Source: Macrostomum lignano
Taxonomy: Eukaryota
DNA length: 64,000 nucleotides
Direction of reading: 5' to 3'
NCBI GenBank assembly: GCA_002269645.1
Contig: NIVC01000408.1
Coordinates: 1-64,000 of the forward strand
Part shown: positions 25,124-57,379 of the stretch, piece after piece
Layout of the letters: each line of letters begins with the position of its first letter
How positions within the stretch are numbered: position 1 is the first letter of the stretch
Position numbers and translations under genes: made by a program
The notes under the pieces: model-generated
Told to the model about the DNA's origin: nothing
Databases searched by the model: none
Seen by the model: only the letters and a program-made list of their open reading frames with translations

Positions 25124-28100
25124 TTACTGCACTGAGCACACCTTGCTGCGGTTCTTCTTCAGCGACACCTGACTAGCCGTAAGCGTCGCCTCCGCGCCGT
25201 CGGTTGCTGCCGATGCGCCATCCTGACGACGCGCCGAGGATCGCCGCGGCTTTGAGGGCGGCTTCGCCGACGACAGCGCGGCCGCCTCCTCCTGGCCGAT
25301 AAGCACGGAGGTCCGGCGGCGTTGAAGCCTTGCGCGACTGGCGGCGCCGCCTTCGACTCGATCCTTGGCCGTCTTGGCCGCCTTCTCCTGAGGAGTCAGA
25401 TCCCGGTGTGAGATTGAATGAGCTGAGATCCCATTCTGAGATTGAATGAGCTGAGATCCCGGTGTGAGATTGCATGAGCTGAGATCCCGGTGTGAGACTG
25501 CATGAGCTGAGATCCCGGTGTGAGATTGCATGAGCTGAGATCCCATTCTGAGATTGAATGAGCTGAGATCCCGGTGTGAGTTTGCATGAGCTGAGATCCC
25601 GGTGTGAGACTGCATGAGCTGAGATCCCGGTGTGAGACTGCATGAGCTGAGATCCCGGTGTGAGATTGCATGAGCTGAGATCCCATTCTGAGATTGAATG
25701 AGCTGAGATCCCGGTGTGAGTTTGCATGAGCTGAGATCCCGGTGTGAGACTGCATGAGCTGAGATCCCGGAGTGAGATTGCATGAGCTGAGATCCCGGTG
25801 TGAGACTGCATGAGCTGAGATCCCGGTGTGAGACTGCATGAGCTGAGATCCCGGTGTGAGATTGCATGAGCTGAGATCCCATTCTGAGATTGAATGAGCT
25901 GAGATCCCGGTGTGAGATTGAATGAGTTGAGATCCCGGTGTGAGATTGCATGAGCTGAGATCCCGGTGTGAGATTGAATGAGTTGAGATCCCGGTGTGAG
26001 ATTGCATGAGCTGAGATCCCGGTGTGAGATAGTATGAGCTGAGATCTCAGTGTGAGATTGTATGAGCTGAGTTCCGGTGAAGGAGTTTCATTAGCTGAGT
26101 TCTGGTGAAGGAGTTTCATTAGCTGAGATCCCGGTGAAGGAGTTTCATGAGCTGAGTTCCGGTGAAGGAGTTTCATTAGCTGAGTTCCGGTGAAGGAGTT
26201 TCATTAGCTGAGTTCCGGTGAAGGAGTTTCATTAGCTGAGATCCCGGTGAAGGAGTTTCATGAGCTGAGTTCCGGTGAAGGAGTTTCATTAGCTGAGTTC
26301 CGGTGAAGGAGTTTCATTAGCTGAGTTCCGGTGAAGGAGTTTCATTAGCTGAGATCCCGGTGAAGGAGTTTCATGAGCTGAGTTCCGGTGAAGGAGTTTC
26401 ATTAGCTGAGTTCCGGTGAAGGAGTTTCATTAGCTGAGTTCCGGTGAAGGAGTTTCATTAGCTGAGATCCTGGTGTAACGAGACAAACAACGAGATAATC
26501 ACCTGCTCCTCTAAGTACTTCTTGTACTTTTCCAAATCGGCTTCCCGTTTCTGCTTGTTCGAAGTTGTCGACGACGAGGCGATGACGCCGTCGAGAGCCT
26601 CTTTGAGCACCCGGTCGCCCTCGGTGACGACCTGTTGCAGCCGGACTCCGCCGGACTCGGCTGGCGGCAGCACAGTCACCCGGCCGTTGCCTGAGCGCTG
26701 GTGCTCGGGGCAGAGCCACACCAGCTTGCCGCTGCCCAGCTGGCACTTTGCCAGACCTGACGCCTGCACCGACTTGAGCCCTGCGGTTGCGGGTGATGGG
26801 GGGGCACGGATTGTACCTAGGTGAGGTAGGAGAGTCTGTGAGAGGCTTGTGAGAGATTGTGAGGGGCCAGCGAGAGTCTGTGAGGTGCCAGTGAGAGTCT
26901 GTGAGGGGTCAGGGAGTCTGCGAGGGGCCAGTGAGAGTCTGTGAGGGCCAGGGAGTCTGCAAGGCGCCAGAAAGAGTGGAGAGATCAGTTGAGCCACAGA
27001 GAACGCGTGTTTGGACTTTAACTTGGAGAGTGACAGCTAAACCAGTATGTACACGTATTATCATTCATCCATAACGAATTCAGCTTAATATTTCGTGCTC
27101 AAAATACAATCTTTAATATTCCAGCATTGTACGTTTCAGTCGGCATAAGTATTTCAATAAAATGATTCCACAGCAGGGCTCAAAGACAAATTGGCCTCAT
27201 TTGAAGGACATTGGGAAGTGCAAACTCCGTGTTTTATCCTTCCTAGTTTTTCCGCTGCTAAAAAGACGTCAAACGAGTGCAAAGTTGTAAGTGGCTTTTT
27301 CCGGGTTTGAATAAAGAGCAGACCTCAGTGCACTGAATTCTGTTTATGGCCTATACTGGCCACTATTACATGTAGCAGGGGATTTAGGGTCATCAGTGAA
27401 GACACTGGGTCAGCAGTGAAGACACTGGGTCAGCAGTGAAGGCACTGGGTCAGCAGTGAAGACGCACTGGGTCAGAAGTGAAGACACTGGGTCAGCAGTG
27501 AAGGCACTGAGTTAGTAGGAGAGACACTGAGTCAGCAGTGAAGACACTGGGTCAGCAGTGAAGACACTGGGTCAGCAGTGAAGACACTGGGTCAGCAGTG
27601 AAGACACTGGGTCAGCAGTGAAGGCACTGAGTTAGTAGGAGAGACACTGAGTCAGCAGTGAAGACACTGGGTCAGCAGTGAAGACACTGGGTCAGCAGTG
27701 AAGGCACTGGGTCAGCAGTGAAGACGCACTGGGTCAGCAGTAAAGACACTGGGTCAGCAGTGAAGGCACTGAGTTAGTAGGAGAGACACTGAGTCAGCAG
27801 TGAAGACACTGGGTCAGCAGTGAAGACACTGGGTCAGCAGTGAAGACACTGGGTCAGCAGTGAAGGCACTGAGTTAGTAGGAGAGACACTGAGTCAGCAG
27901 TGAAGGCACTGAGTTAGTAGGAGAGACACTGAGTCGGCAGTGAAGACACTGGGTCAGCAGTGAAGACACTGGGTCAGCAGTGAAGGCACTGGGTCAGCAG
28001 TGAAGACGCACTGGGTCAGCAGTGAAGACACTGGGTCAGCAGTGAAGGCACTGAGTTAGTAGGAGAGACACTGGGTCAGCAGTGAAGACACTGGGTCAGC

Positions 28101-57379: not shown

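What the first reader, a model, noticed from the sequence alone, without database searches (positions are those of the whole stretch)
25124..57379. Unusual single-gene architecture: H3 tail, LRR-CC-like, COR-like, Cys-rich, SPRY, LRR, Roc-COR, TIR-TIR, CaaX
Seen: 33 exons join without a frameshift into ~3,683 aa. Established: ROCO proteins (LRRK1/2, MFHAS1, DAPK1, Dictyostelium Rocos) use Roc-COR as a dimerising GTPase switch, while SPRY, LRR and TIR are innate-immunity recognition and effector modules. Inference: this is a kinase-free, self-contained sensor-switch-executioner, functionally like an NLR but built on Roc-COR. About 1,600 aa of the N-terminal half match no family I recognise.
Basis: partly seen in the sequence, partly recalled or inferred. 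Interest (0 to 1): 0.78.

Follow-up and report, generated by a model that had tools for sequence, protein, structure and literature searches.

The report
Giant kinase-less ROCO–TIR gene, flatworm
The locus is one intact, about 3,700-residue Macrostomum lignano gene for a giant GTPase-switch (ROCO) protein that carries two TIR immune-signalling domains in place of a kinase; it belongs to a conserved, functionally unstudied family of spiralian animals, so it is real and interesting but not unprecedented.

Summary
An independent gene-finding run plus homologue-guided repair gives one minus-strand gene, ATG at 57379 and stop at 25124-25126.

Pfam confirms LRR, Roc, COR-A, COR-B and two TIRs, and finds no kinase. 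The SPRY is weak here but strong in the orthologue. The H3-identical N-terminus, a conserved 10-Cys module and a CaaX end are all present.

The window is Macrostomum lignano. A scallop RefSeq protein (XP_060065175.1, 3,222 aa) and a M. lignano paralogue (PAA58707.1) are colinear with the model to the last residue. This argues strongly against a two-gene split. The CaaX box is conserved in flatworm, scallop and annelid. The H3-like tail is unique to this copy.

TIR+ROCO proteins were already catalogued in Aplysia, and bacterial LRR-Roc-COR-TIR conflict systems are described, so the kind is known.

Function is inferred: a farnesyl-anchored, GTP-gated assembly that clusters TIR2. TIR2 keeps the catalytic Glu; TIR1 does not. 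Two TIR2 orthologues were inactive as isolated domains in a 2026 screen that also missed known plant TIR enzymes. About 1,500 aa remain unassigned.

The parts
25124..57379 (-). Whole gene: 36 coding exons, 3,699 codons plus stop, spanning 32,256 bp. AT-rich sequence lies on both sides.
   Evidence: Own gene finder, repairs, three-way alignment with paralogue and scallop orthologue, flanks read.
57350..57379 (-). Start codon plus ARTKQTARK, identical to histone H3 residues 1-9. Context is gccATGG, and an in-frame stop lies upstream at 57410-57412.
   Evidence: The H3 sequence is from general knowledge. The motif is absent from paralogue locus L003 and from the scallop orthologue.
57050..57379 (-). 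Exon 1, aa 1-110: H3-like N-terminus followed by a Q/E/D-rich low-complexity stretch.
   Evidence: The exon 1 to exon 2 junction is also used in UniProt fragment P0064.
56798..56941 (-). Exon 2, aa 111-158.
   Evidence: tblastn to paralogue locus L003 7226-7360.
56206..56331 (-). Exon 3, aa 159-200: first LRR-CC-like unit (LSFRGEAYITDQGIRWLCEAF).
   Evidence: 48% identical to L003 7446-7589. Weak match to the Mytilus P0078 N-terminus.
55966..56113 (-). Exon 4, aa 201-250: second LRR-CC-like unit (IDLQHCPAITKNSIAHLF).
55386..55570 (-). Exon 5, aa 250-311.
   Evidence: Conserved in L003 7902-8264.
54252..54368 (-). Exon 6, aa 312-350.
   Evidence: 56% identical to L003 8559-8675.
53095..53294 (-). 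Exon 7, aa 351-417.
   Evidence: Present in fragments P0062 and P0079.
52142..52369 (-). Exon 8, aa 417-493.
   Evidence: Present in fragments P0062, P0079 and P0064.
50844..51816 (-). Exon 9, aa 493-817. It holds a possible degenerate N-terminal SPRY-like stretch, a predicted helical segment, and the start of the COR-A-like winged helix. An alternative acceptor lies 81 nt upstream.
   Evidence: The scallop has a Pfam SPRY at the aligned place (E 4e-6); the window has none. The alternative acceptor is used in P0079.
49785..49985 (-). Exon 10, aa 818-884: rest of the COR-A-like winged helix (GSLIFLRHLSLIVTDLPWFFDLL).
   Evidence: hhalign probability 54%, E 1.3e-4.
48415..49003 (-). Exon 11, aa 885-1081: conserved block of unknown fold. 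It is shared with the paralogue, scallop, mussel and ENA metagenome proteins.
   Evidence: No PDB relative.
47051..47406 (-). Exon 12, aa 1081-1199. The 10-Cys module is at aa 1103-1160 (window 47168-47341). Pattern: C-x2-C-x2-C-x6-C ... C-x-C-x6/7-C-x2-C-G-[VI]-C-x2-C.
   Evidence: conserved in 8 sequences of 6 species or sources. No Pfam hit.
46414..46529 (-). Exon 13, aa 1200-1238.
46265..46320 (-). Exon 14, aa 1238-1257.
   Evidence: Read by hand with P0057 as guide.
46116..46189 (-). Exon 15, aa 1257-1281.
45228..45435 (-). Exon 16, aa 1282-1351: first part of the SPRY domain.
45024..45144 (-). Exon 17, aa 1351-1391: SPRY core (ISIGLVP...GWRAGSIGYHGDDGG).
   Evidence: The scallop SPRY scores 8e-20 at the aligned place.
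43142..44369 (-). Exon 18, aa 1391-1800: end of SPRY (to about aa 1478), then an unassigned region with a G/K/E-rich low-complexity insert.
   Evidence: AlphaFold pLDDT is below 50 here.
42632..42848 (-). Exon 19, aa 1801-1873, unassigned.
41734..42057 (-). Exon 20, aa 1873-1981, unassigned. Three frames are open here; the chosen frame is the one conserved in the paralogue.
40645..40757 (-). Exon 21, aa 1981-2018.
39931..40563 (-). Exon 22, aa 2019-2229: predicted helical region, and LRRs start near aa 2190.
   Evidence: Haliotis P0004 aligns from aa 2142.
38951..39280 (-). Exon 23, aa 2230-2339: LRRs.
   Evidence: Pfam LRR_14, LRR_4 and LRR_8.
38053..38559 (-). Exon 24, aa 2340-2508: LRRs next to Roc.
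   Evidence: Pfam LRR_8 8e-8. tblastn of mollusc homologues.
36361..36741 (-). Exon 25, aa 2509-2635: Roc GTPase. P-loop GLGGVGKTS at aa 2520, switch II DFAGQ at 2574, G4 motif THSD at 2631.
   Evidence: Pfam Roc 4.6e-22. Motifs located. 58-67% identical to homologues.
35487..35921 (-). Exon 26, aa 2636-2780: end of Roc and COR-A.
   Evidence: Pfam COR-A.
34196..34357 (-). Exon 27, aa 2781-2834: end of COR-A.
33897..34093 (-). Exon 28, aa 2835-2900: start of COR-B.
33309..33797 (-). Exon 29, aa 2900-3063: COR-B and the start of TIR1 (DLCLLFSSAD).
31783..32290 (-). Exon 30, aa 3063-3232: TIR1, with Met3101 where the catalytic Glu would be (CRGMF at aa 3098), a linker, and the first third of TIR2 (DVFISYCW...).
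   Evidence: Pfam TIR_2. Residue read.
29335..29886 (-). Exon 31, aa 3233-3416: rest of TIR2, a K/E-rich linker and the start of the C-terminal domain. The conserved Glu3266 (CMMEF at aa 3263) is at window 29785-29787.
   Evidence: Pfam TIR_2. The Glu is invariant in 6 family members. It aligns with the Glu of the WCxxE motif of Cat1 and a plant TIR; the catalytic role of that Glu is from my own knowledge.
28854..28886 (-). Exon 32, aa 3417-3427: 33-nt mini-exon (LMKVLCENEQ), part of the C-terminal domain.
   Evidence: Conserved in the paralogue (LIRVFCENQR) and scallop (CIRVLCEHEE).
28601..28763 (-). Exon 33, aa 3428-3482: C-terminal domain (GWH motif).
28385..28498 (-). Exon 34, aa 3482-3520: C-terminal domain.
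26503..26780 (-). Exon 35, aa 3520-3612: C-terminal domain (KCQLGSGKLVWLCPEH).
   Evidence: Invariant residues are C, SGK, WLC and H.
25124..25387 (-). Exon 36, aa 3613-3699 plus stop: basic tail ending LKKNRSKVCSVQ, a polybasic stretch plus a CaaX box.
   Evidence: CaaX is conserved as CNIQ in the paralogue, CSIQ in scallop and CSVM in Capitella.

Best explanation
Shown. The locus is a single, intact protein-coding gene of the flatworm Macrostomum lignano. It encodes a ~3,700-aa cytosolic protein of the ROCO superfamily that has no kinase. It belongs to a family conserved in Spiralia and also seen in the nematode Plectus.

Common architecture of the family, N to C:
- a variable N-terminus;
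- a COR-A-like winged helix with a conserved block of unknown fold;
- a 10-Cys module;
- SPRY;
- about 700 aa unassigned;
- LRR;
- Roc, COR-A and COR-B;
- TIR1 and TIR2;
- a Cys/His-bearing C-terminal domain;
- a basic tail and a CaaX box.

Inferred mechanism.
- The C-terminal CaaX (CSVQ), preceded by KKNRSK, is farnesylated and holds the protein on a membrane.
- The LRR, SPRY and N-terminal modules bind a ligand or partner. This could be a microbial molecule or a perturbed self molecule.
- That binding changes the nucleotide state of the intact Roc GTPase. As in other ROCO proteins, this alters COR-mediated dimerisation or oligomerisation.
- The two TIRs are thereby brought together. TIR1 lacks the catalytic Glu and would act as the scaffolding partner. 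TIR2 keeps it (Glu3266) and would be the active partner.
- Clustered TIR2 would cleave NAD+ or make an ADPR-derived signal. Failing that, it would nucleate TIR-TIR signalling.
- Overall this would be an NLR-like, GTP-driven innate-immune or cell-death switch.

The H3-identical N-terminus (ARTKQTARK after Met removal) is specific to this copy. It may give it an extra interaction with readers of the free H3 tail. I hold this last point only loosely.
For: One gene.
- The model is colinear with PAA58707.1 (38-52% identity over aa 646-3699) and with XP_060065175.1 (aa 791-1480 and 2225-3699), both to the last residue.
- Fragments of earlier M. lignano annotations overlap across all the doubtful junctions.
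- The N-terminal exons 2-6 are conserved (37-56% identity) and colinear just upstream of the annotated start of the paralogue (L003 7226-8675).
- Other genes flank it on both sides: an ankyrin gene upstream; a UBA-like ORF, a homeobox and a PLP-decarboxylase downstream.

Domains.
- LRRK2, the Chlorobium tepidum (CtRoco) and Methanosarcina Roco proteins, and LRRK1 match by sequence. COR and TIR match by fold in a rotifer homologue model.
- The GTPase motifs GxxxxGKT, DxxGQ and THxD are intact.
- No 19-residue window reaches Kyte-Doolittle 1.6, so no membrane helix is predicted. The N-terminus is hydrophilic.

CaaX and TIRs.
- CaaX is conserved in three phyla.
- The TIR2 Glu is invariant in the family, and the best solved relative is the Cat1 CRISPR-associated TIR (E 4e-6), followed by a plant TIR annotated as an ADP-ribosyl cyclase.
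- TIR1 has Met, Ser or Met at that position.

Concept.
- Bacterial LRR-Roc-COR proteins with TIR and other effectors are interpreted as conflict systems (PMC8195603). Bacterial LRR-Roc-COR-TIR relatives appear in my own search (P0040, P0047, P0051).
- A survey reports that Toll/TLR-type TIRs are absent from flatworms (PMC7075850).
Against: - No transcript, expression or biochemical data for this gene were available.
- TIR2 orthologues from Rotaria sp. (A0A818LFL5) and Dimorphilus (A0A7I8VYT1) are 42-43% identical to the window TIR2. Expressed as isolated domains in E. coli, they gave no cADPR isomers, no NAD+ depletion and no ThsE activation. The same table also lists RUN1, RPS4 and RPP1 TIRs as inactive, so the assay misses assembly-dependent enzymes.
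- A Glu at this position also occurs in TIRs that were inactive in the same screen, including human TLR2.
- The SPRY is below the Pfam threshold in the window.
- About 1,500 aa have no assigned fold.
- Farnesylation and GTP-dependent dimerisation are inferred from motifs and from other ROCO proteins, not tested.
- The H3-like tail is not conserved in the paralogue or the orthologue, so it may be functionally neutral.
Confidence: 0.5

Rival explanations
1. Same protein, but the TIRs are purely non-enzymatic scaffolds. On GTP-dependent assembly they would recruit other TIR adaptors (MyD88- or SARM-like) or downstream kinases, as TLR and MyD88 TIRs do. The protein would then be a membrane-anchored signalling hub rather than an NADase executioner.
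For: - Two TIR2 orthologues showed no NAD+-derived products or NAD+ depletion.
- TLR1, TLR6 and MyD88 TIRs are also among the sequence relatives of TIR2.
- The Aplysia authors read TIR-ROCO proteins as a possible 'novel GTPase TLR signalling cascade' (PMC9334734).
- TIR1 lacks the Glu altogether.
Against: - The Glu of TIR2 is invariant across flatworm, mollusc and rotifer members.
- The nearest solved relatives by profile are the Cat1 CRISPR-associated TIR and a plant TIR annotated as an ADP-ribosyl cyclase.
- The negative screen also missed RUN1, RPP1 and RPS4.
- Toll/TLR-type TIR receptors are reported absent from flatworms, which leaves fewer canonical partners.
Confidence: 0.3
2. The protein is not an immune sensor. 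It would be a housekeeping or developmental ROCO scaffold for membrane traffic, cytoskeleton or neuronal maintenance, as is discussed for LRRK proteins and SARM1. SPRY and LRR would serve as ordinary protein-interaction modules.
For: - The closest solved relatives of the Roc-COR core are LRRK2 and LRRK1.
- Each species shows one or a few copies with conserved architecture, not a large, fast-diversifying family. The exhaustive search with the N-terminal half found only 13 proteins in 1.84 billion.
- CaaX and the C-terminal domain are conserved over long evolutionary distances, which is typical of a fixed cellular role.
Against: - TIR, SPRY and LRR together are characteristic of immunity proteins.
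- Bacterial relatives with the same LRR-Roc-COR-TIR core are interpreted as conflict systems.
- No direct data favour either view.
Confidence: 0.15
3. The locus is two or more adjacent genes, an N-terminal SPRY/Cys-rich gene and an LRR-Roc-COR-TIR gene, that were joined in silico because their exons happen to be in phase.
For: - Existing annotations split it. UniProt holds only fragments for M. lignano.
- Haliotis rubra has a separate 716-aa SPRY gene model immediately upstream, on the same strand, of a partial LRR-Roc-COR model.
- Mytilus edulis has a 1,215-aa protein that covers only the N-terminal half.
- No transcript evidence was available to me.
Against: - The scallop RefSeq model and the M. 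lignano paralogue model each carry both halves in one protein.
- The M. lignano fragments overlap one another across every proposed break.
- No in-frame stop, terminal exon or new start is needed anywhere in the model.
- The split models are marked partial or contain frameshifted junk, which is typical of fragmented assemblies.
Confidence: 0.05

Closest known systems
Ylistrum balloti XP_060065175.1, 'uncharacterized protein LOC132545509' (3,222 aa; P0069)
   Same: It is colinear with the window gene: COR-A-like block, 10-Cys module, SPRY, LRR, Roc, COR-A, COR-B, TIR, TIR, C-terminal domain and CaaX (CSIQ). It aligns to the last residue.
   Different: Identity is 25-34%. It lacks the first ~420 aa of the window gene, including the H3-like tail and the LRR-CC-like units. 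It has a clear extra SPRY at its N-terminus (E 4e-6). No function has been described.
Macrostomum lignano paralogue PAA58707.1 / A0A267ECV5 (BOX15_Mlig008399g1, 2,913 aa; P0073)
   Same: Same species and same architecture. Identity is 38-52% over aa 646-3699, and the CaaX is CNIQ. Conserved N-terminal exons lie upstream of its annotated start.
   Different: Its gene is compact (13.6 kb against 32 kb) and lacks most of the intronic minisatellites. Its candidate first exon starts MDKNFLSKKAPARS..., not ARTKQTARK.
TIR+ROC+COR proteins of Aplysia californica (PMC9334734)
   Same: They are LRR/Roc/COR/TIR proteins with accessory domains, one of which is the SPRY-like NHR. The authors noted them as possible novel GTPase-linked TIR signalling.
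   Different: They were catalogued only by InterPro domains and filed under 'TLRs' or 'MyD88s'. Their accessory domains are MBT, EF-hand and Death. I did not test orthology to this gene.
Bacterial LRR-Roc(AP-GTPase)-COR-effector conflict systems (Kaur, Iyer, Burroughs and Aravind, eLife 2021, PMC8195603)
   Same: The core order is the same: LRR, Roc, COR, then a C-terminal effector that is often TIR. Bacterial LRR-Roc-COR-TIR proteins hit the window's core at about 27-30% identity (P0040, P0047, P0051).
   Different: They are about 600-900 aa and have a single TIR. They have no SPRY, Cys module, C-terminal domain or CaaX.
LRRK2, LRRK1, and the prokaryotic Roco proteins of Chlorobium tepidum and Methanosarcina (solved ROCO structures)
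   Same: The Roc-COR tandem is preceded by LRRs. Sequence E-values run from 5e-41 to 3e-33, and the COR fold matches.
   Different: LRRK1 and LRRK2 carry a kinase and WD40 after COR, where the window protein carries TIR-TIR. No kinase is detected.
MFHAS1/MASL1, the human kinase-less LRR-Roc-COR protein (from my own knowledge; not tested here)
   Same: It is a kinase-less LRR-Roc-COR protein and is reported to modulate TLR signalling.
   Different: It is about 1,050 aa and has no TIR, SPRY or CaaX. I did not test its relationship to this gene.
Plant TIR-NLRs and SARM1 (works-like comparison only)
   Same: They combine a sensor repeat, an NTP- or ligand-gated assembly module and a TIR whose clustering activates NAD+ cleavage. 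Plant TIR structures are the best fold matches of the family's TIRs.
   Different: Their switch is a STAND ATPase (TNLs) or ARM/SAM octamer (SARM1), not Roc-COR. They are not homologous outside the TIR.
Brown-algal LRR-ROCO candidate immune receptors (PMC11378527)
   Same: ROCO proteins are proposed there as immune receptors in place of NLRs.
   Different: I did not examine their architecture or their relationship to this gene; only the abstract was read.

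Membership tests
ROCO superfamily | Roc (Ras-of-complex) GTPase domain with intact nucleotide-binding motifs | tested here: met
   Pfam Roc E 4.6e-22, 78.9 bits against a cut-off of 27. GLGGVGKTS, DFAGQ and THSD are present.
ROCO superfamily | COR domain (COR-A plus COR-B) directly C-terminal to Roc | tested here: met
   COR-A 5e-24 and COR-B 1e-29. LRRK2 and the Chlorobium tepidum Roco protein match by sequence. The COR fold matches in a homologue model.
LRRK / DAPK / Dictyostelium kinase ROCOs | Protein kinase domain in the same polypeptide | tested here: not met
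   No kinase family appears in Pfam scans of the whole model at E up to 0.1. The UniRef name 'non-specific serine/threonine protein kinase' is an automatic label.
Spiralian SPRY-LRR-Roc-COR-TIR-TIR-CaaX family (uncharacterised; type example XP_060065175.1) | Colinear full-length similarity, including the 10-Cys module, SPRY, tandem TIR, C-terminal domain and CaaX | tested here: met
TIR NADases (SARM1, plant TIRs, bacterial Thoeris, AbTir and Cat1) | TIR fold | tested here: met
   Pfam TIR_2 2e-19 with two stretches. The family profile hits Cat1 at 4e-6. Fold matches in the homologue model include plant TIRs, AbTir and SARM1.
TIR NADases (SARM1, plant TIRs, bacterial Thoeris, AbTir and Cat1) | Catalytic glutamate in the alpha-C helix (the WCxxE position) | tested here: met
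   TIR2 has Glu3266. It is invariant in 6 family members and aligns with the Glu of the WCxxE motif in Cat1 and plant TIRs; that this is their catalytic residue is from my own knowledge. TIR1 does not have it: Met in the window, Ser in the paralogue, Met in scallop.
TIR NADases (SARM1, plant TIRs, bacterial Thoeris, AbTir and Cat1) | Demonstrated NAD+ cleavage or cADPR-isomer production | not testable with these tools
   Indirect evidence only. Isolated TIR2 orthologues of Rotaria and Dimorphilus were inactive in an E. coli screen that also scored RUN1, RPS4 and RPP1 as inactive.
NLR / STAND receptors | NACHT or NB-ARC STAND NTPase | tested here: not met
   No such Pfam family was found. The resemblance is functional only.
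Toll-like receptors | Signal peptide, extracellular LRR ectodomain and one transmembrane helix before the TIR | tested here: not met
   No 19-residue window reaches Kyte-Doolittle 1.6 (maximum 1.43) and the N-terminus is hydrophilic. Roc-COR lies between the LRR and the TIR.
SPRY/B30.2 domain proteins | SPRY domain above the Pfam gathering score | tested here: inconclusive
   The window scores 19.5 bits, E 0.0011, against a cut-off of 26.3. The aligned orthologous domain scores 8e-20 in scallop and 6e-9 in mussel, and the GW..S.GYHGDDG motif is present.
CaaX-prenylated proteins | Cys at the fourth position from the C-terminus, with an aliphatic a2 and an X that fits farnesyltransferase | tested here: met
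   The end is CSVQ, preceded by KKNRSK. It is conserved as CNIQ, CSIQ and CSVM in the paralogue, scallop and Capitella. Actual prenylation cannot be tested here.
Histone H3 N-terminal mimics | A free N-terminal A-R-T-K... sequence identical to H3 residues 1-9 | tested here: met
   MARTKQTARK is at the predicted start. The H3 sequence is from my own knowledge. My rough estimate of chance identity is about 1e-11 per protein N-terminus.
Histone H3 N-terminal mimics | Conservation of the mimic in relatives, and binding to H3-tail readers | tested here: not met
   It is absent from the paralogue locus, the scallop orthologue and the two mollusc loci fetched. Binding cannot be tested here.
COR domain (second, N-terminal copy) | Significant similarity to COR-A/COR-B over the whole domain | tested here: inconclusive
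   Only about 50 columns, the winged helix, match: hhalign probability 54%, E 1.3e-4. There are recurrent weak BLASTP hits. No Pfam hit. UniRef calls the fragments 'COR domain-containing'.

The most novel reading that the evidence does not exclude
The H3-identical N-terminus could be an 'integrated decoy' or histone mimic on a membrane-anchored, GTP-gated TIR machine. After Met removal, the free ARTKQTARK tail would be bound or modified by factors that normally act on histone H3, either host readers and writers or pathogen effectors that target the H3 tail. That event would be the trigger, or a brake, for Roc-COR-driven TIR assembly. This would be the first animal ROCO-based analogue of plant NLRs with integrated decoys. 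More broadly, the family would be the animal counterpart of bacterial LRR-Roc-COR-TIR conflict systems.
Probability: 0.07. Interest if true: 0.85.

Novelty: new variant of a known kind. Interest (0 to 1): 0.5.

Why it matters
Animals are usually described as using STAND NTPases (NLRs, Apaf-1) as intracellular immune and death switches. ROCO proteins are known mainly through LRRK2 and Parkinson's disease.

This gene shows in full length that spiralian animals keep a large ROCO protein whose output module is a tandem TIR. This is the same core logic as bacterial LRR-Roc-COR-TIR conflict systems, and it is functionally parallel to plant TIR-NLRs.

Flatworms are reported to lack Toll/TLR-type TIR receptors (PMC7075850), so such proteins may be a main TIR-based system there.

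Macrostomum lignano has RNAi and transgenesis (my own knowledge), which makes three ideas directly testable:
- the GTP-switch-to-TIR idea;
- the role of the conserved CaaX anchor;
- the odd H3-like tail.

The corrected 36-exon model also repairs an annotation that at present exists only as frameshifted fragments.

Tried and rejected
- A word-index homologue search with aa 1-608 found only M. lignano fragments. The first ~420 aa therefore have no detectable relative outside the species, apart from a weak LRR-CC-like match to Mytilus.
- AlphaFold of P0058 (aa 1392-2341) with a 7-row alignment gave mean pLDDT 37.5. Only the LRRs were confident, so no fold search was run on it and the middle region stays unassigned.
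- Profile searches of the N-terminal conserved block (A3) and the C-terminal domain (A5) against PDB sequences found nothing below E 0.1.
- The fold search of the rotifer homologue model returned only COR and TIR matches and nothing for the C-terminal domain.
- PADLOC gave no meaningful hit.
- Pfam found nothing in aa 1-1080, in the Cys module or in the C-terminal domain.
- I considered a ferredoxin-like 4Fe-4S motif or a B-box for the Cys module, because of the CxxCxxC pattern and the neighbouring SPRY. I dropped both for lack of any profile support.
- tblastn of the model against the Haliotis locus did not reach the upstream SPRY gene, because only its 3' end lies in the fetched DNA.
- An N-terminal SPRY-like domain in the window (aa ~490-600) is suggested only by alignment to the scallop SPRY1 and has no score of its own. 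I did not claim it.
- I rejected a pseudogene reading: there are no stops or frameshifts in 11.1 kb of CDS.

Full report
**What is in the sequence**

The region 25124-57379 lies in a window whose long introns are mostly filled by minisatellites (TRF). I listed stop-free segments on the minus strand. Pfam scans of the long ones gave LRR, Roc, COR-A, COR-B and two TIR_2 hits, all above the curated cut-offs.

I then wrote a small splice-aware dynamic-programming gene finder. It used codon log-odds trained only on tblastn HSPs of the first homologue set, generic GT/AG weight matrices and a penalty for tandem repeats. It returned one minus-strand gene from the ATG at 57379 to the stop ending at 25124, with 32 exons.

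Reading the SPRY region base by base, with near-identical UniProt fragments as guides, added four exons: 46320-46265, 46189-46116, 45435-45228 and 45144-45024.

The final model has 36 exons, 11,100 nt and 3,699 aa with no internal stop. Almost all splice sites are cag|...|gtgag.

The ATG sits in a gccATGG context. An in-frame stop lies just upstream, followed by several hundred bases of AT-rich sequence. The stop codon is also followed by AT-rich sequence.

Neighbouring genes are distinct:
- an ankyrin-repeat gene, TRPV-like by eye, on the plus strand from ~59.7 kb;
- a UBA-like ORF on the minus strand at 19.5-20.5 kb;
- a homeobox on the minus strand at ~11.7-11.9 kb;
- a PLP-dependent decarboxylase on the plus strand at 2.5-4.0 kb.

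**Organism and existing annotation**

A search with the SPRY-to-middle region returned only Macrostomum lignano UniProt entries. They are near-identical to the window but interrupted by frameshifted junk. The window is therefore M. lignano.

These fragments overlap one another. P0064 covers aa 61-1080, P0062 covers 351-1238, P0057 covers 1082-1872 and P0058 covers 1392-2341. No near-identical entry for the Roc-COR core used as query (aa ~2512-3060) came back. A full-length product of this locus thus appears to be missing from the searched collections.

**One gene or several**

The exhaustive HMMER search of 1.84 billion representatives with P0062 found only 13 proteins. Two are decisive.

- P0069 is RefSeq XP_060065175.1, 'uncharacterized protein LOC132545509' of the scallop Ylistrum balloti, 3,222 aa. 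Pfam finds SPRY (8e-20), LRR, Roc, COR-A, COR-B and two TIRs in that one protein.
- P0073 is PAA58707.1 (BOX15_Mlig008399g1), a 2,913-aa M. lignano paralogue.

A three-way MAFFT alignment shows both are colinear with my model to the very last residue. The alignment supports even the exons I doubted. Exon 42057-41734 has three open frames, and the chosen one is the conserved one. The 33-nt mini-exon 28886-28854 reads LMKVLCENEQ, against LIRVFCENQR in the paralogue and CIRVLCEHEE in the scallop.

Upstream of the annotated start of the paralogue, its locus (L003) contains unannotated exons. They are 37-56% identical to model aa 122-350, in the same order and on the same strand. The N-terminal part is therefore also coding, conserved and syntenic.

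In Haliotis rubra a SPRY gene model lies directly upstream, on the same strand, of a partial LRR-Roc-COR model. In Mytilus edulis a 1,215-aa protein corresponds to the N-terminal half only. I read these as split annotations of the same kind of gene. I put the two-gene reading at about 5%. Only transcript data can close it.

**Anatomy of the protein**

Coordinates are mapped.

- aa 1-10 are M+ARTKQTARK, identical to histone H3 residues 1-9. aa 11-110 are Q/E/D-rich.
- aa ~159-235 hold two LRR-CC-like units. The only outside support is a weak match (E 0.06) at a comparable N-terminal position in the mussel protein.
- aa ~792-845 resemble the winged helix of COR-A. Many homologues' COR-A segments hit this spot weakly. 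A profile-profile comparison with genuine COR gives probability 54%, E 1.3e-4 over 51 columns. It is not a full second COR, and no Roc precedes it.
- aa 846-1085 are a conserved block without relatives in Pfam or PDB.
- aa 1103-1160 are a 10-Cys module, C-x2-C-x2-C-x6-C ... C-x-C-x6/7-C-x2-C-G-[VI]-C-x2-C. It is conserved in the window, the paralogue, scallops, mussels and metagenome sequences. In a cytosolic protein it presumably binds metal.
- aa ~1290-1478 are the SPRY. It is below threshold here (19.5 bits) but strong at the aligned place in molluscs.
- aa 1479-2190 are unassigned. AlphaFold with a 7-row alignment gave pLDDT below 50.
- LRRs run from ~2191 to 2500. Roc covers 2515-2634, with an intact P-loop, DFAGQ and THSD. 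COR-A covers 2690-2828 and COR-B covers 2851-2991.
- TIR1 covers ~3022-3160 and TIR2 covers ~3179-3320.
- A C-terminal domain (~3365-3560) has invariant C-E-x3-G-W-H ... C-x-L-x-S-G-K-x2-W-L-C-x2-H. It has no Pfam or PDB relative. In the rotifer homologue model it is predicted with moderate confidence, pLDDT about 62-86, and has no fold match in the top 50.
- The protein ends LKKNRSKVCSVQ.

No hydrophobic window reaches the transmembrane threshold. The protein is therefore cytosolic, and the CaaX is its only membrane signal.

The CaaX box is conserved as CNIQ (paralogue), CSIQ (scallop) and CSVM (Capitella). This is good evidence that it is functional and that the 3' end of the model is correct.

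**The TIRs**

In a family alignment of TIR2 the Glu of the C-x-x-E motif is invariant. It aligns with the Glu of the WCxxE motif of Cat1 and of a plant TIR; that this Glu is their catalytic residue is from my own knowledge.

The profile's best solved relative is the CRISPR-associated TIR Cat1 (4e-6). After it come a plant TIR annotated as an ADP-ribosyl cyclase/cADPR hydrolase, TLR1, TLR6 and MyD88. TIR1 has Met, Ser or Met at that position.

A 2026 preprint that screened 155 eukaryotic TIR domains in E. coli included two TIRs that are clearly TIR2 orthologues. One is from Rotaria sp. Silwood1 (A0A818LFL5, a 2,825-aa protein). The other is from Dimorphilus gyrociliatus (A0A7I8VYT1, 2,178 aa). 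They are 42-43% identical to window aa 3179-3307 without gaps. Both are listed without activity. The same table also lists RUN1, RPS4 and RPP1 TIRs without activity. A negative result for an isolated domain is therefore weak evidence.

The legend of that preprint's figure of active TIR proteins lists LRR, Roc and COR among the domain abbreviations. I could not tell which protein that refers to.

**Most likely mechanism**

What is shown:
- an intact gene;
- a bona fide Roc-COR with intact GTPase motifs;
- LRRs before it and two TIRs after it;
- a conserved CaaX.

What is inferred from established knowledge of ROCO proteins, CaaX proteins and TIR enzymes is the following sequence. Farnesylation anchors the protein on a membrane. 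LRR, SPRY and N-terminal modules bind a ligand. The nucleotide state of Roc and COR-mediated dimerisation change. TIR1 and TIR2 are brought into an active arrangement. TIR2 then cleaves NAD+ or nucleates TIR signalling.

This is the logic proposed for bacterial LRR-AP-GTPase-COR-effector systems (PMC8195603). My first search recovered bacterial LRR-Roc-COR-TIR relatives at about 27-30% identity.

I give the enzymatic version about 0.5 overall, a scaffold-only TIR about 0.3, and a non-immune housekeeping role about 0.15.

**The H3-like tail**

Nine of nine identities at the very N-terminus are not chance; I estimate about 1e-11 per protein. The motif is nevertheless absent from the paralogue's candidate first exon (MDKNFLSKKAPARSQVSKQAPP...), from the scallop protein and from the mollusc loci fetched.

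It is thus a recent, copy-specific feature. It could be a true mimic of the free H3 tail or an accident of a basic, Q-rich N-terminus. I flag it as the most novel possibility that remains open (about 7%), not as a finding.

**Comparison with what is known, and novelty**

The protein passes every test for ROCO membership. It fails the tests for LRRK/DAPK (no kinase), NLR (no STAND NTPase) and TLR (no membrane helix).

TIR+ROC+COR proteins with variable accessory domains, including the SPRY-like NHR, were catalogued in Aplysia (PMC9334734). ROCO proteins as immune-receptor candidates have been proposed for brown algae (PMC11378527) and for bacteria.

I could not find a description of four things in the papers searched:
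- the full conserved architecture, with the 10-Cys module, the C-terminal Cys/His domain and the conserved CaaX;
- any functional work on the family;
- a full-length model for this M. lignano gene;
- the H3-like tail.

I therefore rate it a new variant of a known kind, with interest 0.5. It is solid and testable in a tractable flatworm, but it is neither unprecedented nor mechanistically demonstrated.

Noticed in passing
window 25388-56797 (introns of the gene): 22 of 35 introns hold a tandem-repeat array of at least 100 bp, with periods from 3 to 82 bp. In most of these introns the array fills more than half of the intron. The largest is a 1.8-kb array of a 10-bp unit inside the intron that splits TIR2 (29887-31782). 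The paralogue packs a similar CDS into 13.6 kb, so the arrays account for much of the size difference. The units differ from intron to intron.
   Followed up: partly
L003 6606-10000 (M. lignano contig NIVC01002342.1, upstream of PAA58707.1): The deposited paralogue model starts at an internal Met. Its reading frame stays open upstream. Conserved exons matching window aa 122-350 lie at L003 7226-8675, and a Q-rich candidate first exon starts at 6606. The paralogue is probably about 600 aa longer than annotated.
   Followed up: partly
window 59660-63105, + strand: A divergently oriented neighbour gene has ankyrin repeats (Pfam Ank_5 9e-7). Its exon translations look TRPV/OSM-9-like by eye. It lies roughly 2.3 kb from the start of the ROCO-TIR gene, head to head.
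   Followed up: partly
window 2531-4048, + strand: Exons of a pyridoxal-dependent decarboxylase (Pfam Pyridoxal_deC 5e-21), aromatic-amino-acid or histidine decarboxylase-like.
   Followed up: partly
window 11683-11919, - strand: A homeodomain exon (Pfam Homeodomain 1e-15). A possible Q-rich upstream exon lies at 12222-12641.
   Followed up: no
window 19431-20530, - strand: A GC-rich, low-complexity open frame of 330 aa with a UBA-like match (1.4e-6) lies about 4.6 kb downstream of the ROCO-TIR gene. It is probably a separate gene.
   Followed up: no
window 13034-13885: A 61-67-bp minisatellite whose unit contains AACCCTAACCCTA, a telomere-like (CCCTAA)2 motif, at an interstitial position.
   Followed up: no
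L001 1-4456 and 10001-56707 (Haliotis rubra QXJH01001013.1): A 716-aa SPRY gene model lies directly upstream, on the same strand, of a 'partial' LRR-Roc-COR model (roco11-like). The two are likely one gene split by annotation, as in M. lignano.
   Followed up: partly
window aa 3365-3560 (29490-26659) and homologues P0014, P0023, P0038, P0011, P0069: The domain after TIR2 has invariant Cys and His residues (C..GWH ... C.L.SGK..WLC..H). It is conserved from rotifers to molluscs and has no Pfam or PDB relative. It may be an undescribed metal-binding domain that always accompanies this TIR pair.
   Followed up: partly
UniProt M. lignano entries P0057-P0064 and P0079: The earlier M. lignano proteome holds this gene only as overlapping fragments with frameshifted stretches. 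They carry misleading UniRef names such as 'Calpain catalytic', 'PLAT', 'TNFR-Cys', 'DRBM' and 'SHR-BD domain-containing'. Small consistent substitutions (for example V to I and T to A) suggest a near-identical second allele or homeologue.
   Followed up: no
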